In this document: piece after piece, positions 34,461 through 43,923 of the stretch | How positions within the stretch are numbered: the first letter of the stretch is position 1 | How the letters are laid out: every line of letters starts with the position of its first letter | Sequence record: OP310983.1 | Strand: one strand, 5' to 3' | DNA length: 64,000 bases | Program-made: the position numbers and the translations under genes | The notes under the pieces: generated by a model | What the model saw: only the letters and a program-made list of their open reading frames with translations | Database searches by the model: none | What the model was told of the DNA's origin: nothing

Positions 34461-35468
34461 TTAATCGAGAACTAATGGGGCTACTTTAACTTGATATATA
34501 CCAGTTAATAATTGGCTTTTCAACATATATGCTCCACCACCAACCGCCATTTTAGATCCACCTACAATGATCATGCTATTATCCGGACCTTTAGCTATAG
34601 ATGAAATATTAAGGAATCCGATACCTAGTTCAAATGGTTCAGCCCATTTCCGGCGCCTAATATTAAAACGTTGTGCAAACATTTTAGTTACACCGCCGAC
34701 ATCAACAGCGTTAAGGTAATTAAAATAGTCCCCATCTACATAACCATTACCTTGCCAGATTGTTCCTTTATCAGCAGGTATAATCATCCAAGGTGTTTGC
34801 TCCCATATTAAGGTAGTTGCATTATATCGATAAACTTCAAGATTAGGTATGTTCTTTGTATTATCCCAACCACCAAAATGGTAAAAGTAACCATTATAAA
34901 AGAATAACTGTTGACCTGAACGAGCACCACCTGAATAGTCTTGCCCGCTAAGCCAAGACTTACTTGATGGTTTTAATCGCATTGCGTTTACGCCAATTGG
35001 GTTAACGCATAGAATAAGATCATTACCATCTGATGCGGAGGCTGTGCCCCAAAGTGGTACGGGACCACTATATCGCTCAACCCTATTGCCTGTAGCTATA
35101 TCAAAATGTTGTATAAAGTTAGATGTTCCCGTACCACCATTACCAGCCGAGTTCCATCCAGTAATACCGCCATAAACAATAAAGTTATTCTTATGTAATG
35201 TCCCAAATCCTAAAGATACCCCTGGTAAGAATGTTCCAGAAGCAGTTGCACCTATATCGGCAAATGGCGATATGGTAAAACGTCTGAACACAGTTGCAGC
35301 TGTTTGTCCTTCAGTATGATGACCAGATCCAACATACAGTGTATTTCCATCCACATATGACATTGTACCAGCTAACGCTACAGGTAGATCACCTAATTTA
35401 ATAATTTCATTAAATCCAACCAAGGGTAACTCTTCGCCTATATCTGGCGATAATAGTAATTCAAACAT
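34461..35468 (-). CDS. Kelch-like beta-propeller protein, probable virion protein (gp298-like by position)
   Basis: Repeated hhhhGG motifs: LYVGSG, FIVYGG, FYHFGGWD, MIIVGG. Confidence 0.7.
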   Translation of the reverse strand: MFELLLSPDIGEELPLVGFNEIIKLGDLPVALAGTMSYVDGNTLYVGSGHHTEGQTAATVFRRFTISPFADIGATASGTFLPGVSLGFGTLHKNNFIVYGGITGWNSAGNGGTGTSNFIQHFDIATGNRVERYSGPVPLWGTASASDGNDLILCVNPIGVNAMRLKPSSKSWLSGQDYSGGARSGQQLFFYNGYFYHFGGWDNTKNIPNLEVYRYNATTLIWEQTPWMIIPADKGTIWQGNGYVDGDYFNYLNAVDVGGVTKMFAQRFNIRRRKWAEPFELGIGFLNISSIAKGPDNSMIIVGGSKMAVGGGAYMLKSQLLTGIYQVKVAPLVLD

Positions 35469-35522
35469 GAGTGTGCTCTCAAGTAAATCATTTTAATTCA
35501 TAAGATAACCCATGGCAACATA

Positions 35523-35546
35523 AAAGAGTAGCCGAAGCTACTCTTT
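35523..35546 (-). terminator. terminator downstream of tRNA-Asp/Asn
   Basis: AAAGAGTAGC-CGAA-GCTACTCTTT. Confidence 0.8.
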
Positions 35547-35552
35547 AGAATA

Positions 35553-35628
<76 letters not shown>

Positions 35629-35634
35629 ATTAAA

Positions 35635-35711
35635 TGGCGCGCCCAAGGGGACTCGAACCCCTGACCACCCGCGTGACAGGCGGGTATTCTAACCAACTGA
35701 ACTATGAGCGC
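35635..35711 (-). tRNA. trnD: tRNA-Asp(GUC)
   Basis: Cloverleaf; loop CTGTCAC; encoded CCA. Confidence 0.97.
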
Positions 35712-35763
35712 AAACGTATGGACATGACTTCCTACATAGTATTACATAACCAGTAATATTTTA

Positions 35764-36111
35764 TTACGGGCGATCAGTCCAGTGCTTGAAATAGTTACCA
35801 TCCTTGGGACGATCGTACTTAGCAAGAATATTTTTAAGTTCTTCGCCGGACAACTTAATACTATCGCCTACTGGGCTATCCAGTTCAGGGCAAGGTTCAG
35901 TTTTACGTGTAATGATTAAATTATCAGTCCCATCTTTGAAGATAAAGATAAACTGCGTTTCATTAGCACTAATCTTTTTCTTAACGCAATGCTTTACTTC
36001 TGGATGTTTCTTGTGGATCGTTACAAAAGATTCAACAAGAGTTAGCTTTATAAACTCAGGGCTAATAAATGTGAAATATACAGCGCTCTGCGTTGGGGTT
36101 AGATGATCCAT
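35764..36111 (-). CDS. hypothetical protein
   Basis: GGAG RBS. Confidence 0.75.
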   Translation of the reverse strand: MDHLTPTQSAVYFTFISPEFIKLTLVESFVTIHKKHPEVKHCVKKKISANETQFIFIFKDGTDNLIITRKTEPCPELDSPVGDSIKLSGEELKNILAKYDRPKDGNYFKHWTDRP

Positions 36112-36113
36112 AT

Positions 36114-36401
36114 TTACTCCGTATGTTTGAGATAGGCTTTAACTGCTTTAAGACCTTTATTAAAGAACATAGCTTCAACATAAGTAATGTTACTTACATC
36201 CTCGCCGATAAGTTCCCATTTGATGTAACGTGTAACAGCGTTGATTGTAATATCTAATCCGTTTGGGAATAGGGTTACTTCATCGGTCAGGTGAATCCAA
36301 TCGGGAGCCTTCGCTCCATTACGTAAACGGGGACTAAAAGTAAGATTATAAAGTGTTTGTAATGGTTGTCTCAATAGTTCTTTTTGTTCTTGATGTTCCA
36401 T
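36114..36401 (-). CDS. hypothetical protein
   Basis: AGGAA RBS before MEHQEQ (start moved from 36419). Confidence 0.7.
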   Translation of the reverse strand: MEHQEQKELLRQPLQTLYNLTFSPRLRNGAKAPDWIHLTDEVTLFPNGLDITINAVTRYIKWELIGEDVSNITYVEAMFFNKGLKAVKAYLKHTE

Positions 36402-36409
36402 GTATTTTC

Positions 36410-36631
36410 CTAGAGACATTTAAAAATATAAATAGAATGGTTATCTCTTTCGGTTATCTTTAGAGTATTCTCATTTCGAATAACTTCAAGAGACTTGTAT
36501 TTATGTTCCAGAATATCCAGATGAGAAATACACTGTTCCCTATTTTCAAATAGGATATTACTTTCATTAGTCGAAATGAAACCAAATAATCCAACTTTGA
36601 TAGATAATACCAACATTATTACTGTATTCAT
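36410..36631 (-). CDS. small exported/membrane protein
   Basis: GAGGAA RBS before MNTVIMLVLSIKVGLFG; FENREQC motif. Confidence 0.65.
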   Translation of the reverse strand: MNTVIMLVLSIKVGLFGFISTNESNILFENREQCISHLDILEHKYKSLEVIRNENTLKITERDNHSIYIFKCL

Positions 36632-36683
36632 GTTTTCCTCAATGAGACAGTATAAAACCTCCCCCAAGTGGGAGGCTAGTATA

Positions 36684-36760
36684 TGGTGGGCCCAGCAGGA
36701 CTTGAACCTGCGACCAAGCGATTATGAGTCGCCTGCTCTAACCAACTGAGCTATAGGCCC
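36684..36760 (-). tRNA. tRNA(CAU), most likely Ile2 (lysidine, reads AUA) rather than Met
   Basis: Cloverleaf; GGCGA-CTCATAA-TCGCT arm and C4-G69/C5-G68 pairs as in enterobacterial ileX; lacks the initiator GGG/CCC anticodon stem and C1:A72 mismatch. Confidence 0.9.
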
Positions 36761-36767
36761 TTTTTAT

Positions 36768-37061
36768 TTATTCTGGTAAGAATGTTCCATCTTTTTGACG
36801 GACTAATACACCTGACCATTTGAATGTATTTGTATCACTAGCAGGGCACTCTCTAATTACATTGGTTCTAAATGTGCCATGTGGATAGGTTACAGTGAAT
36901 GTAATATGGTTATTACAAACATGTAATACAGAAGACTTTGCTTCTGTTAGATAGTGTAAGCCTTGAGCTAATTGAATATTAGTTAATTCAGGGTCACTAA
37001 GAATAGCGTAAAGAGCTGTTCCTATAATTTGATGTTCCCATGATATCCATTTATTATCCAT
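36768..37061 (-). CDS. hypothetical protein between tRNAs
   Basis: AGGA RBS. Confidence 0.7.
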   Translation of the reverse strand: MDNKWISWEHQIIGTALYAILSDPELTNIQLAQGLHYLTEAKSSVLHVCNNHITFTVTYPHGTFRTNVIRECPASDTNTFKWSGVLVRQKDGTFLPE

Positions 37062-37082
37062 CCTATTTACCTATTATTAAAA

Positions 37083-37158
37083 TGGTCGGAGTGGGGAGAC
37101 TCGAACTCCCGACATCCTGCTCCCAAAGCAGGCGCGCTACCAACTGCGCTACACTCCG
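37083..37158 (-). tRNA. trnP: tRNA-Pro(UGG)
   Basis: Cloverleaf; loop TTTGGGA; encoded CCA. Confidence 0.97.
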
Positions 37159-37167
37159 TATTTAAAT

Positions 37168-37252
37168 TGGTGCCCGAAGTCGGATTCGAACCGACAAGAC
37201 CGTAGCCGGAAGATTTTAAGTCTTCTGTGTTTACCAATTTCACCATTCGGGC
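37168..37252 (-). tRNA. trnL: tRNA-Leu(UAA)
   Basis: Cloverleaf with long variable arm; loop CTTAAAA; encoded CCA. Confidence 0.97.
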
Positions 37253-37310
37253 ATTGTGCTTCAATACATAACATGTAATGCTAGGTATTTTATTACAACT
37301 TATTTTAAAT

Positions 37311-37763
37311 TCAACGTGGCCATTGTAAAGAAGTTATCTTATTACCATTAATGTAGACATCGGTCACTTCGCACCAATCATTAATTCTGTGTTCAATAAT
37401 TGGAACATCATTTCGGCCAGCCACTCCAATCATATTCCATTTAACATAAATATTCATTAGATCAATTGTTAATTTCTCTTTTATGAGTTTAGGAGAAATT
37501 AATTTAATAATATTAATGTTAAAGAAGTAATTATTAACTTCTTCTAAATATTCATTAGTATTAGTAGTACTAACTTTGCCTTCATGTTCAAGTGAGGATG
37601 GTTTATTCTGATTTACAATATTGCTCACTAGACTTCTTAAAACGGCACTTGCCCTACCAGCTTCGCGTCTTTTATACTTATCATAGTCTTTTACATTAGC
37701 TGCAATTTTATCAAATTCTTTTTGGGCATAGATTAGCCCTGGTAAAAGTTCATTTTTGATCAT
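37311..37763 (-). CDS. hypothetical protein
   Basis: 150 aa ORF. Confidence 0.7.
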   Translation of the reverse strand: MIKNELLPGLIYAQKEFDKIAANVKDYDKYKRREAGRASAVLRSLVSNIVNQNKPSSLEHEGKVSTTNTNEYLEEVNNYFFNINIIKLISPKLIKEKLTIDLMNIYVKWNMIGVAGRNDVPIIEHRINDWCEVTDVYINGNKITSLQWPR

Positions 37764-37834
37764 GTTATAATTACTCTATTTTATTTATACATATTTTAAG
37801 GTACACTAGTAAAAAAACAAAAAAAAAATATAAA

Positions 37835-37852
37835 GCCTCCCCGAAGGGAGGC
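37835..37852 (-). terminator. intrinsic terminator
   Basis: GCCTCCC-CGAA-GGGAGGC with a long T run downstream on the - strand. Confidence 0.8.
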
Positions 37853-37991
37853 GATATATCGTCATTAATGCCCAGCAAAGAGTTTTACTCTCTGGGAGCC
37901 AGTTGGAAGGGGGACTGGCTCCGATTTATTATGACTAATGTAGAAACGAGGGGGAGGGATCATTTCTACATATCATTACATACTCAGTAAG

Positions 37992-39875
37992 TTATTCTTC
38001 AATACCAATGAGCGTATTGCGTTCATTAGTGTTCTCTACGGATGAACCACTTGGGAAGCTACTGATAGACGCTTGCATTAGTTTCAACATATCGATAGCA
38101 AATACTCGATAGGTAGATTCGACCTTAGCATCGTCGTACGCTGCATGAATGTTAAGAATGATATTATCGGCCCGTTTAGCCAGCAGATATACGTCCTCAA
38201 GAGCATCTTTATCTTTAATAGTGGATAGCTTATGTTTGTAGATATCCCCATTGACAGATAGGTCAGGATACTGGGCTACCCAAGTGTCCGCAATAGTCTT
38301 AGTGTTGTTAGACAGAACGTCAATGATAACGTTAGCTGCTTCCACAATACCGGTAGCATCAAGCAACTTAATCTTAGCACCAGCATTATCTGGCCATTTG
38401 GGTTCTTGGAAGTTTGTCTTTACATTGGGTTTCCATTCAGCCAGAAGAGTAGCGACTTTCTTAGGGTCTTGCCAATCATTCCCTTTGAACAGATTAACCA
38501 CGGGGGCTAGTATCTTACTGTTCTCATCCAGAACTTTCTGGTTGTGACGATCAGCTTTAGCTACAGCATTAGTGATATTGGCTTTTGCGGTCTTAGGATC
38601 ATTAGACGCGAACGTCTCGTAACTCGATACTTTTACTTCGCCGGTTTTAAGCTTTGCTTCTGCCACCCATTTGGCATCACCATAGGTACTTTTCAGTGTA
38701 GCAATAGCTTTCTTCTTTTTATCAAGATTGATCTCAGGGCCAGAGTCGAAGATACTCTTAATGGTGTCGATAAGACCTTCATTTGAGACTTGTATAAAAC
38801 CGGGAGTATTAATGATGGACTTCTCTACATACCCGCCACGAATAACTCGATTTATAAAACCATTAAGACCACTACCAGTTTCGGCCATATCTTTCATGAT
38901 TTCTATATTTGTTTCACCAGCACTCTGGGCATTGTATAAATAATAAGAACCATCTTTAAATTTTAGTATAATCCAGTCATCTCCAGTTAGATATGAATCA
39001 ATATTACTATCATTCATACTTTGGTATTTAATGAATTCTGGATTAGTACTTAGTACTTCTTCAATAAACTCTTCTAATGCCGCAGAATTATTAATAGCAT
39101 CAACAGGTGGAATTTCACCATCAATGGGTTCAGTAGTTGGACCAGTAACAATGGCAGGTAACGGATCCTCCTCTACAATAACAGTTTCTTCCACTGGTAG
39201 AGCACCACATGAAGCATCAATTAGTTTATTAAAACTACTAATGATCTCACCAAGTGCTACAAGAACTGCTGGCTGTTCAACTTGTTCAACTTTAGCAATA
39301 CCAGTTTCTGTAAATTCTTCAGTGATTCGGTTATAAACTTCTACTAGTTGGTTAGTAAGTTCTGCTACTTTTGGCAGAGTCTGCTTAGACAGAGGTTCAA
39401 CTACAGTTGTATCTGCTTCAACAAAAATAGAATCATCTTCTTCTAAACGGCTAGTATTAGCTGAGCCAGCTGTGAAGTTATAAGGCATATCTTGAATTAC
39501 TTCATTAATTTCAGATGCCTCCATATCTTCATTTAGACGACCACTATAAGTACGCATCATACCTTCTGCTTCTTTAATAGTGGAATGCGCTAAGCGTCCC
39601 CAATCACCACGCATAATACCGCGCTCGGTAAGACCGCGTGCAGCTGAACCAAGATCAATAGGTTCTTCAATAAATGATTGTTCTTCAACCCACTCCTCAT
39701 TACTGTAACATTCTTTTAGAATGGTTTTAAATTTAGTACTAAAGGGTTGTAGAATCTTTTTATCTACTTGTTCAACATTTGTTTTAAAGTGTTCTAGACT
39801 TGGTGTAGCTTTTGAAGATACTTTTTCAGTACCGCTATATAGCGTACGGTTTAGGAAGTTTAGCATTTTATTCAT
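37992..39875 (-). CDS. multi-domain virion head/inner-body protein (gp303-like) with internal KTSC-like module
   Basis: Two copies of LK..Y....WV; S/A-x-E motifs (PSLE, AALE, VSNE, SVE) typical of gp175 cleavage; acidic linkers; position two genes downstream of nrdB. Confidence 0.7.
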   Translation of the reverse strand: MNKMLNFLNRTLYSGTEKVSSKATPSLEHFKTNVEQVDKKILQPFSTKFKTILKECYSNEEWVEEQSFIEEPIDLGSAARGLTERGIMRGDWGRLAHSTIKEAEGMMRTYSGRLNEDMEASEINEVIQDMPYNFTAGSANTSRLEEDDSIFVEADTTVVEPLSKQTLPKVAELTNQLVEVYNRITEEFTETGIAKVEQVEQPAVLVALGEIISSFNKLIDASCGALPVEETVIVEEDPLPAIVTGPTTEPIDGEIPPVDAINNSAALEEFIEEVLSTNPEFIKYQSMNDSNIDSYLTGDDWIILKFKDGSYYLYNAQSAGETNIEIMKDMAETGSGLNGFINRVIRGGYVEKSIINTPGFIQVSNEGLIDTIKSIFDSGPEINLDKKKKAIATLKSTYGDAKWVAEAKLKTGEVKVSSYETFASNDPKTAKANITNAVAKADRHNQKVLDENSKILAPVVNLFKGNDWQDPKKVATLLAEWKPNVKTNFQEPKWPDNAGAKIKLLDATGIVEAANVIIDVLSNNTKTIADTWVAQYPDLSVNGDIYKHKLSTIKDKDALEDVYLLAKRADNIILNIHAAYDDAKVESTYRVFAIDMLKLMQASISSFPSGSSVENTNERNTLIGIEE

Positions 39876-39930
39876 GTCTACTCTCTCGTTGATGACTGTT
39901 AATAAGAGTGCTATAGAATTGTTAGCATAA

Positions 39931-39952
39931 ACCCTCCCAATTAAGGGAGGGT
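39931..39952 (-). terminator. intrinsic terminator (identical core to 41605-41626)
   Basis: ACCCTCCC-AATTAA-GGGAGGGT. Confidence 0.8.
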
Positions 39953-39960
39953 CATTATGT

Positions 39961-40374
39961 CTACATTATATCCCGTGTACCATCATTCATTTCAACAACA
40001 GTGACTTTATCACCAACCTTTGGTTTTTCATTGGTAACTGTTTGAACCATGTACTGCTTGCCATCTGTATTAACAATCAGTTTACATTGGAATGTTTCAG
40101 TAGCACTAACATTATTACCGACTGCACCGCCAGCGGCACCACCGATTAAACCACCTACCCAACCTCCAGATTTACCAAAGATTGCTCGACCTAATACAGC
40201 GCCTGCGGTGGCTCCAACTGCACCTCCAACAGTAGTACCGACAACACTACTATCTTTAGCAACTAGCTGACATTCTGAATGTGCAATAATACCATCTGTA
40301 GTTGATTTTACTTCAGTTGCTGCAAATAGAACAGTAGACCATATTAAAACTACGAATGCGATAATCTTAATCAT
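39961..40374 (-). CDS. exported glycine-zipper 2TM protein (YcfJ/SlyB-like)
   Basis: Signal peptide; GTTVGGAVGATAGAVLG...GGLIGGAAGGAVGN; C-terminal beta domain PKVGDKVTV. Confidence 0.8.
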   Translation of the reverse strand: MIKIIAFVVLIWSTVLFAATEVKSTTDGIIAHSECQLVAKDSSVVGTTVGGAVGATAGAVLGRAIFGKSGGWVGGLIGGAAGGAVGNNVSATETFQCKLIVNTDGKQYMVQTVTNEKPKVGDKVTVVEMNDGTRDIM

Positions 40375-41534
40375 AAGAAGTCAACCTCAAATTCTTCTTC
40401 TTCACCAACATCATTTACAACGTTGACCATGTAATCAGGCTTCTCTTCTTCCTGAGGAGATGCTTGGGTTGATGAAATATCTAGGTAGTCTTCCATATAA
40501 AGAAGTGGGTTCTTCTCTGGCCAAACAAAATCAAATCCAGCTGATTCTTTAAACTCTACTTGATACTGTTCTACAACATCATTTTCAATACTTAGGAATG
40601 TTGCTGCGGCATTAGCATTGAAAAGTACCCAGTTAATAAGTTTAGTCGCATTAACACCAGTCAGTTCACGACCTTCAGAGAATAGATAATTAACCCAGGT
40701 AACTTCAGTCTTTACAATTTCCCATAGTAGTTCAATGATTTTATCTTTACATTGGCTGTAAGCGAGTTTACCACGTTCAGTTGCCAGTAGTGCACGAATA
40801 ACTTCTTGACCATACTGCGCATGGATTTCGAATTCGTCTTGGGCAATCTTCTTAACAGCAGCTGCAATTTGCTGGAATGCACCGGTGCGGCCAATAGCGA
40901 AAGTTACAGCAAAGGATGCCATGAACTGAATACGCTCAAGGAAATATAGAGCGATGAAGAACATGAATACCTTATTGTAAAGTTCTTGATCATTGGGTAC
41001 CTGATTAAGAGCATACGCGTGAACTGCGTCATGTGCTTCACCCATAGTGCGGGCTACTGCAACCATTCGTTCTTGTGCTTCTTCTACCCTAAGAATTTCA
41101 TCTAGAATAACTTTAGGATCTTTAAAGCTATTACGTACAATCTCAGAATAAGTTAAAGCATGTACGTCTTCATTATCATTAATACGTACATATCCTGCCC
41201 ATACTCGTGAATCAGTCATGACAGGTGATAGAATATTAACAATGGAACGACTGGCTACAGAGTCAGCTTCCCATTGCCACGCCAGTGTCTTAATCATCAT
41301 GTCATAAGTTGATTTATCACATGTTTCAAATTCTACTAGACAAGTAGAAAAGTCAAATTCTAACTCATCCCAATCAAGCATTTTTAGACGCTTATATAGG
41401 TCCCACATTTTAGGATAATGAGTGTGGATTGAATCTAGTAGACCTGGGTCATCTCCAAGAATAATTTCTGGTAGATGATAATCACTCTTAGCCGCATTGA
41501 AGATTTTCTTTGGTAGTTGTGATTTAGTAGACAT
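40371..41534 (-). CDS. nrdB: ribonucleotide reductase class Ia beta subunit
   Basis: WEADSVA, NEDVHALTYS (radical Tyr), LERIQFMASFA and DEFEIHA di-iron motifs. Confidence 0.96.
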   Translation of the reverse strand: MSTKSQLPKKIFNAAKSDYHLPEIILGDDPGLLDSIHTHYPKMWDLYKRLKMLDWDELEFDFSTCLVEFETCDKSTYDMMIKTLAWQWEADSVASRSIVNILSPVMTDSRVWAGYVRINDNEDVHALTYSEIVRNSFKDPKVILDEILRVEEAQERMVAVARTMGEAHDAVHAYALNQVPNDQELYNKVFMFFIALYFLERIQFMASFAVTFAIGRTGAFQQIAAAVKKIAQDEFEIHAQYGQEVIRALLATERGKLAYSQCKDKIIELLWEIVKTEVTWVNYLFSEGRELTGVNATKLINWVLFNANAAATFLSIENDVVEQYQVEFKESAGFDFVWPEKNPLLYMEDYLDISSTQASPQEEEKPDYMVNVVNDVGEEEEFEVDFL

Positions 41535-41602
41535 GTCAGTTCCTTTACAATTTAAAAATATTTCTTACAATAAATAATAGAGGTTAGTATAAATTGGGAA
41601 TA

Positions 41603-41628
41603 ACACCCTCCCAATTAAGGGAGGGTGT
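41603..41628 (-). terminator. hairpin between nrdA and nrdB
   Basis: ACACCCTCCC-AATTAA-GGGAGGGTGT. Confidence 0.75.
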
Positions 41629-41634
41629 ATACAC

Positions 41635-43923
41635 TTAAAGAGTGCACGAACCGCCTGCACACCCAACTTCGGCATTAGTTACCTCAACAGCACGTTCGAG
41701 TGATTTAATATCAAGTCCTGCTGCTGTTTCTAGATTTACATAATACCGGGTTTTCATTCCACGTTTCACCATGTAGAAGTGATTACTTAGCATTTCATTA
41801 GAAGAGATCTTTTCAGAACCTACAATGCGTCGATAGAGGTCCGCACTGATTGTTTGATCAGTCCACTTTTGAATAATGGCATAGCAATCAATAAGATCTT
41901 TAGTGGGGATATCATAAGCTGATTCATACACATAAGAATCATCATCTCCATATGGAGCAGCCCATAGTACACGTGCGCCATTATCAGTCTTATTAAGAAT
42001 TAGACGACGTACCGGATATGGACCATTAGTTGATCCTAGTGCTTTAGATGACGCCTCACCCGGCATGTATGCAGCTAGTACGGAGTGTGCAATACCACCA
42101 TTCTCCTTAATCTCTTTCTCTAGCTCATCCCATGGATAAAGTTCTTCAAAACCACCTTCAATGATAGTGTCCACTGACTTATTATAAGTCTTACGTGGAG
42201 TCCATCCCTCTGGCCATTTAGTCTTATGAATCCAAGGCGCATTACCACGTTCTTTAGCAATCTTAAGTGACGCCTTAATAAGGAAGTACATATGCCGTTC
42301 AGCAATGAAGTGGATTTCAGCTTTACCAGCATCGCTACTATATTTAAGGCCAGCACGTGCCATATGCGTAGCTAGACCCATGATACCAACACCAGCACTC
42401 ATTCGATTCTTAGCGGTTAGTGCAAGGTGTGGGAAAGCATACTCTGCATTAAGGATACAATAGTCAATCATCTTAAGTGCGTAGTAAGCTGCCATTTCAT
42501 AAGTTTGCTTATCAGGAACATTATCCACTGCAATAGCAGCCAGTGAACAAGTAGCAATTTCACCGCGACCATGATCCTCACTAGAATAAAGATCTTCCAT
42601 TCGATAGTAAGGCTTAGTGGGTTCTGCGATTTCAAGGCATAGGTTAGAACTGTAAATAGGTTCTTTAAATGGCGTATGATGATTGAGTTCATCAATTTGA
42701 GCTGAATAGATGGTTCCAGTCTCATATGCTTCAACTAGCATTGATTTGAGAAGATCCCGAGCATTTACATAGGTTTTCTCAAATTTAGGATCTGCTTCAT
42801 ATTTTTCATAAAGCTTAATAAACTTATCAATATTACCACTATAGAAAGCCTCATGTAGATCTGGTGCAGTAAATGGATTGAATACAAAGATCATGCCATC
42901 TTTCTGCGCCGCTTTCTTAGCAAAGAACTTATTACTTAGGAATGCATAGTGAAGATCACGGTTCTTCCTATCCTCAGTAGAACGTGGATTACGTAGCTGG
43001 GTAATCATATCTGCTTCAGGATCGAAAGCACTATAGTAACACGTAACAGCACCACCTCGACCATTCTGTAGGTTAGCCCTTACTGCTTTACCCATTACAT
43101 CGATGTATGGTTTCTTACCTTGGTGAATGATTAGACCATTACGGATAGGATCACCAATTGACCTAGTCATTAAGTTAACACCAATACCTGCTGATGATTG
43201 GGTCATGATGTTGGCAATATAATCACCCATTGCCAGTGATACGCCATTATCACCAGAAGCAAATAGGCAGCATGATGCAAAACCACGAAGCTTAGTACCT
43301 AGATTAACGTAGTTAGGTGTTGGGGCACTAAGAATTTTATTAGAAAGTAGTTTATAGTAATTCTCCACATGGGTCATGCGAGTTTCAGCTGGCTCTTTTT
43401 CAGCTAGAGCCATTGCCATTCGCATATATACAAACTGGGCAGTCTCATATTCTTGACCAGTTTTACGATTACGTAGAGCATACTTTCCACGAATGTGATG
43501 AAGTGAAAAATGCGGACAAAGTAGGTCAAGATCATGATCAATGATCTTTTCAATCTGAGCGTATTCTTTACTACTATAATCTAATTTAACAATGATACCA
43601 TCTTTACGCATCCTGGTTTGAAGCGCTTTAACAGTTGGGATGCCATTTAGACCATAGAACTTCTTACGAAGATAAATCGCATATAGTCGACCAGCCATTA
43701 GATAATAAGACCATGTCTTACGATTTAGACATTCTTCAATAAGTTGTAATTGTAGTTCTTGTGATGAAGTTTTATCACCAAGAGCTTGAACAGCATCCAT
43801 CACAACACTACTCCAATCCACCTTATCGCCAAGATGTTGGGCTGCCCATTCACCCCAACCATTAATCTTAGCAGGTGAGTATGCTTCTTCAGTACCGTCT
43901 AGTTTAATGATAGTTTTTAACAT
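41635..43923 (-). CDS. nrdA: ribonucleotide reductase class Ia alpha subunit
   Basis: SAPTPNYVNLGT, FASCCL, SSNLCLEI, MPGEASS, KTRYYVN and C-terminal CAGGSCTL; likely start MLKTIIKLDG at 43923. Confidence 0.97.
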   Translation of the reverse strand: MLKTIIKLDGTEEAYSPAKINGWGEWAAQHLGDKVDWSSVVMDAVQALGDKTSSQELQLQLIEECLNRKTWSYYLMAGRLYAIYLRKKFYGLNGIPTVKALQTRMRKDGIIVKLDYSSKEYAQIEKIIDHDLDLLCPHFSLHHIRGKYALRNRKTGQEYETAQFVYMRMAMALAEKEPAETRMTHVENYYKLLSNKILSAPTPNYVNLGTKLRGFASCCLFASGDNGVSLAMGDYIANIMTQSSAGIGVNLMTRSIGDPIRNGLIIHQGKKPYIDVMGKAVRANLQNGRGGAVTCYYSAFDPEADMITQLRNPRSTEDRKNRDLHYAFLSNKFFAKKAAQKDGMIFVFNPFTAPDLHEAFYSGNIDKFIKLYEKYEADPKFEKTYVNARDLLKSMLVEAYETGTIYSAQIDELNHHTPFKEPIYSSNLCLEIAEPTKPYYRMEDLYSSEDHGRGEIATCSLAAIAVDNVPDKQTYEMAAYYALKMIDYCILNAEYAFPHLALTAKNRMSAGVGIMGLATHMARAGLKYSSDAGKAEIHFIAERHMYFLIKASLKIAKERGNAPWIHKTKWPEGWTPRKTYNKSVDTIIEGGFEELYPWDELEKEIKENGGIAHSVLAAYMPGEASSKALGSTNGPYPVRRLILNKTDNGARVLWAAPYGDDDSYVYESAYDIPTKDLIDCYAIIQKWTDQTISADLYRRIVGSEKISSNEMLSNHFYMVKRGMKTRYYVNLETAAGLDIKSLERAVEVTNAEVGCAGGSCTL

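What the first reader, a model, noticed from the sequence alone, without database searches (positions are those of the whole stretch)
37992..39875. Head polyprotein with a KTSC-like module between protease-site motifs
Seen: domain 1 (after PSLE, with LKECYSNEEWV) and domain 3 (after VSNE-GLIDTIK, with LKSTYGDAKWV) look like two copies of one repeat. Between them, about 38829-39017, lies MNDSNIDSY..GDDWIILKFKDGSYYLY...MKDMAETGSGLNGFINRVIRGGY, which resembles KTSC domains, bracketed by AALE and VSNE. Established: the phiKZ head protease cuts after S/A/G-x-E. Inferred: maturation releases a small nucleic-acid-binding KTSC-like protein that is packaged and may be ejected with the genome, so the virion protein acts as a cargo carrier.
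Basis: partly seen in the sequence, partly recalled or inferred. Interest (0 to 1): 0.65.

Follow-up and report, generated by a model that had tools for sequence, protein, structure and literature searches.

The report
KTSC-fold core in phiKZ gp303 polyprotein
This gene is the counterpart of phiKZ gp303, a giant-phage head protein already known to be cut during maturation, and its conserved centre is a small KTSC-fold domain fenced by protease-site motifs, while its C-terminal part is a swappable cassette.

Summary
The ORF (37992-39875, minus strand, 627 aa) is real. The window is a phiKZ-like Pseudomonas phage, 100% identical to KTN4 over this gene, and the gene is the orthologue of phiKZ gp303. 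gp303 is a non-essential head protein reported as proteolytically processed.

All three observations hold.
- **KTSC-like module.** Residues about 279-354 fold confidently (pLDDT 89). Among 48,161 PDB representatives the only match with Z of 5 or more is a KTSC crystal structure (7x8c, Z 6.5, 66 of 69 residues). Pfam's KTSC model does not reach threshold, so it is KTSC-like and not a Pfam member.
- **Repeat.** Domains 1 and 3 are diverged copies of one helical repeat (0 of 2000 shuffles reach the profile score).
- **Protease motifs.** The S/A/G-x-E motifs occur at chance frequency, but those beside the module are positionally conserved in 31 of 31 relatives.

- The KTSC-like module is the invariant core of the family, not a swappable cargo slot.
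- The exchanged part is domain 3. It is replaced as a cassette between phiKZ and KTN4-type phages, starting four codons after VSNE.
- The released fragment is acidic (pI 4.3), which weakens the nucleic-acid-binding idea.
- Cleavage at these exact sites and ejection remain untested here.

The parts
37992..39875 (-). Whole gene, 627 aa, orthologue of phiKZ gp303 (KTN4-type allele)
   Evidence: ORF list. PHROG 24656 'virion structural protein' matched 1-627, 1388 bits. 100% DNA identity to KTN4. Synteny nrdA-nrdB-gp304-gp303-gp302-tRNAs as in phiKZ.
39792..39875 (-). N-terminal leader aa 1-28, with candidate cut sites GTE (15-17) and PSLE (25-28). Homologous to the about 20-aa leader ending in [VI]S.E in relatives.
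   Evidence: Motif positions. 31/31 relatives have a leader S/A/G-x-E, ending at residue 20 in 22 of them. Removal is inferred.
39072..39791 (-). Domain 1 (aa 29-268): very acidic (pI 4.3, net -27), lineage-specific, diverged copy of the helical repeat; ends in AALE268
   Evidence: Profile of foreign repeat units scores 16.8 bits in two collinear pieces; 0/2000 shuffles reach it. hhalign aligns the LKxxYxNxxWV motif, P 0.008. Charge. AF2 confidence below 50.
38778..39071 (-). Predicted released fragment aa 269-366 (11.1 kDa, pI 4.3) between AALE268 and VSNE366
   Evidence: 99% identical between phiKZ-type and KTN4-type. Cleavage is inferred from motif conservation, not shown.
38814..39041 (-). 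KTSC-fold core aa 279-354 (three strands plus helices) with YLY at 312-314 (window 38934-38942) and a conserved GxGLNxF[IV] loop
   Evidence: AF2 pLDDT 89. 7x8c Z 6.5-6.6, 4rgi Z 6.6. Invariant columns Y312, L313, Y314, G334, G336, L337, N338.
37995..38777 (-). Domain 3 (aa 367-627): helical repeat unit beginning right after VSNE (GLIDTIKSIF...)
   Evidence: Repeat HMM hit aa 356-542, E 1e-63. 31/31 repeat units in the family start with an S-x-E motif followed by G/D/S, a hydrophobic residue and so on. PHROG 28891 on aa 330-520.
37984..38766 (-). Replaced cassette: no DNA similarity to phiKZ here, while flanks are 97.3% (38767-42875) and 99.0% (35196-37983) identical
   Evidence: blastn against the phiKZ locus. 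Protein identity falls from 98-100% to 12-30% after aa 372.
39932..39947 (-). Terminator-like hairpin between gp304 and this gene
   Evidence: Pattern scan only
37835..37852 (-). Terminator-like hairpin downstream of the gene
   Evidence: Pattern scan only

Best explanation
The gene encodes a precursor of internal head proteins of a phiKZ-like phage, the gp303 orthologue.

Layout:
- a short leader;
- a diverged acidic copy of a helical repeat (domain 1);
- a KTSC-fold domain of about 75 residues;
- a second helical repeat unit (domain 3).

Each border carries the S/A/G-x-E motif of the prohead protease (gp175 in phiKZ).

Most likely the protease removes the leader and separates the units inside the prohead. 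That would leave an 11-kDa acidic KTSC-like fragment (aa 269-366) and one or two helical fragments packed with the DNA.

The KTSC-like domain is the conserved working core of the whole family. The repeat units are accessory and vary in number (0 to 3). In Phikzvirus the C-terminal unit is exchanged as a cassette at the cleavage-site boundary.

Shown here: fold, repeat relationship, motif conservation, cassette replacement.

Taken from papers on phiKZ: head location, processing, dispensability.

Inferred: use of these particular sites, retention of the KTSC fragment, its ejection, and its molecular target.
For: - Identity and synteny with phiKZ gp303.
[quoted passage not shown] Semi-tryptic cleavages were mapped to gp94, gp177 and gp303 (PMC10449902).
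- KTSC fold. Sub-threshold Pfam KTSC hits in 15 of 61 alignment members.
- The module is present in all syntenic orthologues, including the short ones that are little else.
- 31/31 relatives have G-x-E at a fixed offset of 11 residues (one at 14) after the module, and all have a leader site.
- 31/31 repeat units start at an S-x-E motif.
- The Y12 'PA7' variant keeps PGFE plus a 17-aa spacer before VSNE. KTN4 and phiKZ therefore lost one of two sites by deletion but kept the other.
- Related KTSC-like small proteins lie in phage head modules, for example between a 469-aa gene with no family hit that follows the terminase and the capsid gene in L009. Some are annotated as structural proteins in other large phages: PA5oct, CBB.
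Against: - No cleavage map for this protein could be read. Thomas et al. 2012 is not held, so the use of AALE268 and VSNE366 is unproven.
- The motif is short and occurs at chance frequency: 12 seen, 12.1 expected.
- Pfam KTSC does not detect the query.
- Z 6.5 is within the range that common small folds can reach, although here it stands 2.4 units above the next hit.
- gp303-3xFLAG is not among the proteins reported as validated for injection.
- The acidic charge argues against simple DNA or RNA binding.
Confidence: 0.6

Rival explanations
1. Only the N-terminal leader is removed. The KTSC-like domain stays covalently joined to domain 1 and/or domain 3 in the mature head, and the internal S/A/G-x-E motifs are not all used.
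For: The motif frequency equals chance. No site map was available. AALE268 has no conserved counterpart in relatives, where the module follows the leader through an acidic linker.
Against: The G-x-E after the module sits at a fixed offset in 31/31 relatives. Every repeat unit begins at S-x-E. After a 17-aa deletion one site was still kept. Several cleavages are reported for gp94, gp177 and gp303 together.
Confidence: 0.25
2. The KTSC-like domain is an assembly handle. It docks the precursor to the scaffold, inner body, portal or protease during prohead assembly. The helical repeat units are the functional cargo, which is the reverse of the reader's carrier idea.
For: The module is constant and always next to the leader, while the C-terminal units vary in number and are swapped. 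The acidic charge fits protein-protein rather than nucleic-acid contacts.
Against: The PA1C (250 aa) and PhiPA3 (233 aa) orthologues carry the module with no repeat unit, so there would be a handle without cargo. Free-standing 75-aa relatives are widespread outside virions.
Confidence: 0.2
3. One reading: the middle position is a slot that carries interchangeable small cargo proteins, here a nucleic-acid-binding KTSC protein.
For: The module is bracketed by protease-type motifs. KTSC has been called DNA- or RNA-binding by prediction.
Against: No relative has another module there. The module is 99% conserved between alleles that differ completely in domain 3. The fragment has pI 4.3.
Confidence: 0.05

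Closest known systems
phiKZ gp303 (PHIKZ303, NP_803869; PHROG 24656)
   Same: Orthologue: same position after nrdB and gp304. Residues 1-372 are 98-100% identical. It is a head protein reported as processed and dispensable.
   Different: Residues 373 to the end are only 12-30% identical, with no DNA similarity. This is a different allele of the C-terminal repeat unit. In the held library only four works mention phiKZ's gp303, and none holds the term KTSC.
KTSC domain proteins (Pfam PF13619; structures 7x8c of Methanolobus vulcani and 4rgi, Yersinia pestis YPO2434)
   Same: Same small fold over the whole domain (Z 6.5-6.6, rmsd 2.4-2.8, 66-69 residues). Central Y-x-Y motif. Similar size.
   Different: Sequence identity is 19-20%. 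The Pfam model gives no hit on the query and only sub-threshold hits, on the strand half, in relatives. There is an extra N-terminal helix. The domain is embedded in a virion precursor and is acidic.
T4 internal proteins IPI-IPIII with a capsid-targeting leader cut by the gp21 prohead protease (from general knowledge, not tested here)
   Same: Short leader ending in x-x-E. Packaged inside the head. Dispensable in the laboratory. Variable cargo behind a conserved leader or cleavage site.
   Different: Here several units are made as one precursor. The constant part is a KTSC-fold domain. The protease is the gp175 type with S/A/G-x-E specificity. Ejection has not been shown.
phiKZ inner-body and ejected head proteins gp93/95/97, gp94, gp177 and SPN3US ejection proteins
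   Same: Processed by the same protease at the same motif; helical domains; head interior. The tail of the PA1C orthologue hits PHROG 6807 'internal head protein'.
   Different: No detectable sequence relation between the query itself and those families in the scans run. gp303 is not listed among the major inner-body proteins in the papers read.

Membership tests
Pfam KTSC (PF13619) | Score at or above the curated cut-off (25 bits) of the family model | tested here: not met
   No hit on the whole protein or on the excised module, even at E<=10. No hit in six-frame search of the nearest record. Relatives reach at best E 2.9e-4, below cut-off.
Pfam KTSC (PF13619) | Fold of solved KTSC proteins (three-stranded sheet followed by helices, about 70 residues) | tested here: met
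   7x8c Z 6.5-6.6, rmsd 2.4, 66-67 of 69-70 residues. 4rgi Z 6.6. Only chain with Z>=5 among 48,161.
Pfam KTSC (PF13619) | Conserved Y-x-Y motif in the middle of the domain (from general knowledge of the Pfam description) | tested here: met
   Y312-L313-Y314 are invariant in the 30-sequence alignment A2.
Pfam KTSC (PF13619) | Nucleic-acid binding (postulated only) | not testable with these tools
   The function is only postulated. Phage fragments are acidic, pI 4.3-5.0.
phiKZ gp303 family (PHROG 24656 / 17428) | Full-length profile match and conserved genomic position after nrdB | tested here: met
   1388 bits over 1-627. Synteny in phiKZ, PA1C, PhiPA3, 201phi2-1, Viktualia.
phiKZ gp303 family (PHROG 24656 / 17428) | Presence in the virion head and proteolytic processing | not testable with these tools
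   Reported for phiKZ gp303. 201phi2-1 gp455 is annotated as identified in virions by mass spectrometry.
Substrates of the gp175-type prohead protease | S/A/G-x-E motif at domain borders, conserved in position among relatives | tested here: met
   PSLE28, AALE268, VSNE366. 31/31 leader sites and 31/31 G-x-E after the module. 31/31 repeat units start at S-x-E.
Substrates of the gp175-type prohead protease | Observed cleavage at those residues | not testable with these tools
   The cleavage table of Thomas et al. 2012 is not held. The supplements of PMC10449902 held as text give no positions.
Ejected internal proteins (T4 IP-like) | Entry into the host cell with the DNA | not tested
   A gp303-3xFLAG construct exists, but gp303 is not in the list of validated injected proteins. 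A C-terminal tag would not report on the KTSC fragment.

The most novel reading that the evidence does not exclude
The acidic KTSC-like fragment is delivered into the cell with the genome as a decoy or inhibitor aimed at host defence proteins that use KTSC-like modules. Free-standing and fused relatives of this module sit in defence contexts: a HEPN fusion beside a ThsB-type TIR gene, and a copy beside an OLD-family nuclease. The module also resembles the C-terminal domain of a chain in the SIR2/HerA complex. The swapping of the neighbouring cassette and the dispensability in PAO1 would then reflect an arms race.
Probability: 0.1. Interest if true: 0.8.

Novelty: new member of a known kind. 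Interest (0 to 1): 0.45.

Why it matters
gp303 is one of the processed head proteins of phiKZ-type phages that still has no function.

- **Testable unit.** Giving its conserved core a fold, and defining a fragment of about 98 residues, makes it directly testable by expression, tagging, or deletion on strains that carry defence systems.
- **Family grammar.** The layout is leader, KTSC-like core, then cleavable helical units that each start at S-N-E|G. It shows how these phages build and diversify their packaged protein load.
- **Recombination joint.** The cassette swap at the cleavage boundary between phiKZ and KTN4-type phages suggests that protease sites may double as recombination joints.
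- **Uncurated family.** The work also uncovers a KTSC-like family that Pfam does not detect at threshold: 577 clusters at 50% identity. It is spread over phage head modules and bacterial defence neighbourhoods.

Tried and rejected
- Pfam hmmscan on the whole protein and on four pieces: nothing meaningful.
- NCBIfam: nothing.
- Plain BLASTP of domain 1 against domain 3: nothing.
- hhalign of domain 1 against the repeat alignment: only P 0.008 over 44 columns. The HMM-plus-shuffle test was more decisive.
- Word-based protein search: found only the two close alleles and fragments.
- Profile search of PDB sequences with alignment A1: KTSC 7x8c only at E 0.83, and PBP5 hits judged chance.
- Foldseek against PDB: no hit at E<=0.001, KTSC at E about 0.25. 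The Z-score aligner was needed.
- Full-length AF2: pLDDT 52, domain 1 unusable. A fold search with it gave only generic helical hairpins and bundles, so no fold was assigned to the repeat unit.
- ESM Atlas: busy or no usable hit.
- The window's own assembly is not held.
- Thomas et al. 2012 and the 201phi2-1 proteome paper could not be read. The supplements of PMC10449902 held as text give no cleavage coordinates.
- Weak tblastn hits to the Achromobacter phage JWX 'tail fiber protein' and the Microcystis phage Mel-JY01 were looked at and not relied on.
- No sequence was taken to be human-like.

Full report
**What the window is.** The region is AT-rich phage DNA. The 1884-base stretch is 100% identical to Pseudomonas phages KTN4, Koomba boorn-mokiny kep-wari Wadjak 1 and Pa_AttikonH10, and matches 47 Pseudomonas phage records in all. 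The ORF at 37992..39875 on the minus strand encodes 627 residues. It matches PHROG 24656, 'virion structural protein', end to end at 1388 bits.

It lies after nrdA, nrdB and a glycine-zipper gene, and before the gp302 homologue and a tRNA cluster (Leu, Pro, Met, Asp, Asn). This is exactly the arrangement around PHIKZ303 in phiKZ. It is therefore the orthologue of phiKZ gp303.

**What is already published on gp303.**
- A transposon study calls gp303 a virion protein of unknown function that tolerates insertions and deletion. [quoted passage not shown]
- A proteomics study recovered semi-tryptic peptides and states that eight cleavages map to gp94, gp177 and gp303. It confirmed the S/A/G-x-E motif (enriched as LSxE) (PMC10449902).
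- That study also built gp303-3xFLAG. gp303 is not among the proteins it reports as validated for injection.
- The Churi paper notes that gp303 is one of the few genes below 80% identity between phiKZ and a KTN4-type phage.
- In the held library only four works mention phiKZ's gp303, and none of them holds the term KTSC.
- The original cleavage paper (Thomas et al. 2012) is not held.

**Observation 1, the KTSC-like module.** Pfam gives nothing for the protein or for the excised module, even at E<=10. The KTSC model finds nothing in the nearest held record.

An exhaustive HMMER search with residues 269-372 found 577 clusters at E<=0.001. Many are free-standing proteins of about 75 residues. Others are long proteins with the module at residues about 60-145.

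An alignment of the module with 60 short relatives (A1) shows a tight family with invariant Y, G and L positions. 15 of the 61 members give sub-threshold hits to Pfam KTSC, best E 2.9e-4, covering the strand half of the model.

AlphaFold2 with this alignment gives a confident model: pLDDT 89, one helix, three strands, helices. The structure searches gave the following.
- **All 48,161 PDB representatives.** The only chain with Z>=5 is 7x8c_A, a KTSC family protein (Z 6.5, rmsd 2.4 A, 66 of 69 residues). The next hit is Z 4.1.
- **Second look at Foldseek's list.** This adds 4rgi, KTSC protein YPO2434 (Z 6.6), and residues 608-696 of a chain in the SIR2/HerA complex (Z 6.3).
- **Predicted viral structures.** The best hits are the gp303 homologues of 201phi2-1, PhiPA3 and Phabio. 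Nine of the remaining rows in the top 50 are phage proteins annotated as KTSC.

The Y-x-Y motif is present and invariant (Y312-L313-Y314). So the module is KTSC-like in fold and very probably a distant relative. It is not a member of the Pfam family by the family's own cut-off.

**Observation 2, the repeat.** BLASTP of domain 1 against domain 3 finds nothing. Domain 3 belongs to a repeat unit found one to three times in relatives.

A profile built from 23 units of other phages, none from the phiKZ lineage, scores domain 1 at 16.8 bits in two collinear pieces:
- profile positions 26-68 on residues 33-77, which carry the LKECYSNEEWV motif;
- profile positions 117-179 on residues 118-188.

None of 2000 composition-preserving shuffles exceeds 6.7 bits. 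Domain 1 is therefore a diverged, very acidic copy of the same unit (pI 4.3, net charge -27). Its predicted structure is too uncertain to compare.

**Observation 3, the protease motifs.** The protein has 12 S/A/G-x-E motifs against 12.1 expected from its composition. The bracketing alone is not evidence. Position is.
- In 31 of 31 relatives with the N-terminal architecture there is a leader site, ending at residue 20 in 22 of them.
- In the same 31 there is a G-x-E, as PG[MLFI]E, at a fixed offset of 11 residues after the module (one at 14).
- All 31 repeat units examined begin with [VAPT]-S-x-E followed by G/D/S, a hydrophobic residue and a conserved amphipathic stretch.
- One Phikzvirus variant (MZ444140) still has TPGFE, a 17-residue spacer and then VSNE. 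KTN4 and phiKZ have a deletion that fuses these to PGFIQVSNE, losing one site and keeping the other.

This pattern is what one expects if the borders are cut. The cuts themselves were not observable here.

The opposite is seen. The syntenic orthologues range from 233 to 768 residues: PhiPA3 233, PA1C 250, Viktualia 496, Phabio 736, 201phi2-1 768. The KTSC-like module is the one shared part, always just behind the leader.

The variable parts are the repeat units. Within Phikzvirus, residues 1-372 of the KTN4-type and phiKZ-type proteins are 98-100% identical, and identity then drops to 12-30%. At DNA level:

| Window stretch | Identity to phiKZ |
|---|---|
| 38767-42875 | 97.3% |
| 37984-38766 | none detectable |
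| 35196-37983 | 99.0% |

. The middle stretch runs from four codons after VSNE to nine bases past the stop codon. Domain 3 has thus been replaced as a cassette whose left joint is the cleavage-site boundary. Both alleles belong to the same repeat family.

**Function.** KTSC function is only postulated: RNA binding in the Pfam note as quoted in PMC8541194, and 'DNA-binding' in PMC9503650. The phage fragments are uniformly acidic, pI 4.3-5.0 with net charge -5 to -12. Free-standing relatives have a median pI of 8.0. This speaks against plain nucleic-acid binding by the phage version.

Context of relatives is mixed.
- One lies in a small-phage head module, between a 469-aa gene with no family hit that follows the terminase and the capsid gene.
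- Small KTSC-fold proteins are annotated as structural in PA5oct and CBB.
- One is fused to HEPN beside a ThsB-type TIR gene.
- One lies beside an OLD-family nuclease.

My best reading is a processed internal head precursor whose KTSC-like core is released and packed with the DNA. Whether it enters the host, and what it binds, is open.

**Verdict.** The gene itself is known. New here are the fold assignment of its core, the family-wide grammar of cleavable units, and the cassette exchange.

The notes of earlier readers on this genome concern other places and did not affect this reading.

Noticed in passing
window 37984-38766 compared with L001:4110-4942: Clean allelic replacement of the C-terminal repeat unit between KTN4-type (35 records) and phiKZ-type (12 records) phages. 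The left joint is four codons after the VSNE motif and the right joint is just past the stop codon.
   Followed up: yes
L013:301-2211 (MZ444140, phage 'PA7' from strain Y12): A third variant of the gene keeps PGFE plus a 17-residue spacer before VSNE and ends 10 residues early. It shows that KTN4 and phiKZ carry a recent in-frame deletion between two protease motifs.
   Followed up: yes
proteins P0012-P0156: A family of about 75-residue KTSC-like proteins, 577 clusters at 50% identity, that Pfam does not detect at threshold. It has a strongly conserved YLY...GxGLNxFIN pattern.
   Followed up: partly
L010:1375-2409: A 344-residue protein with an N-terminal HEPN domain and a C-terminal KTSC-like module, next to a ThsB-type TIR gene: a defence-island context.
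   Followed up: no
L008:3001-3228: A free-standing 75-residue relative lies beside an OLD-family ATPase/TOPRIM nuclease, an MmeI fragment and a Fic/RhuM gene in a bacterial contig.
   Followed up: no
L009:3534-3806: A 90-residue relative sits in a small-phage head module, after the terminase and a 469-aa gene with no family hit and before the capsid gene. This is the usual place of minor head proteins.
   Followed up: no
P0039 (2835 aa) and P0059 (2307 aa): Giant metagenomic proteins with 11-12 tandem stretches matching the KTSC-like module.
   Followed up: no
PDB 8wld_L and relatives, residues 608-696: The C-terminal domain of a chain in the SIR2/HerA anti-phage complex resembles the module nearly as well as KTSC proteins do (Z 5.9-6.3). 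A paper notes HerA-like systems coupled to KTSC genes.
   Followed up: no
L003:2809-3561 (PA1C orthologue, = P0010) residues 187-242: The short orthologue's tail matches PHROG 6807 'internal head protein'. It carries an AG.DGL...A motif that recurs before S-N-E sites in many long relatives, possibly a shared linker or targeting peptide.
   Followed up: no
window 39932-39947 and 37835-37852, minus strand: Terminator-like hairpins on both sides of the gene suggest it is transcribed on its own, apart from the nrd genes upstream.
   Followed up: no
window 37067-37264: The 65-aa ORF listed here overlaps tRNA-Pro and tRNA-Leu on the same strand and is almost certainly not a gene.
   Followed up: partly
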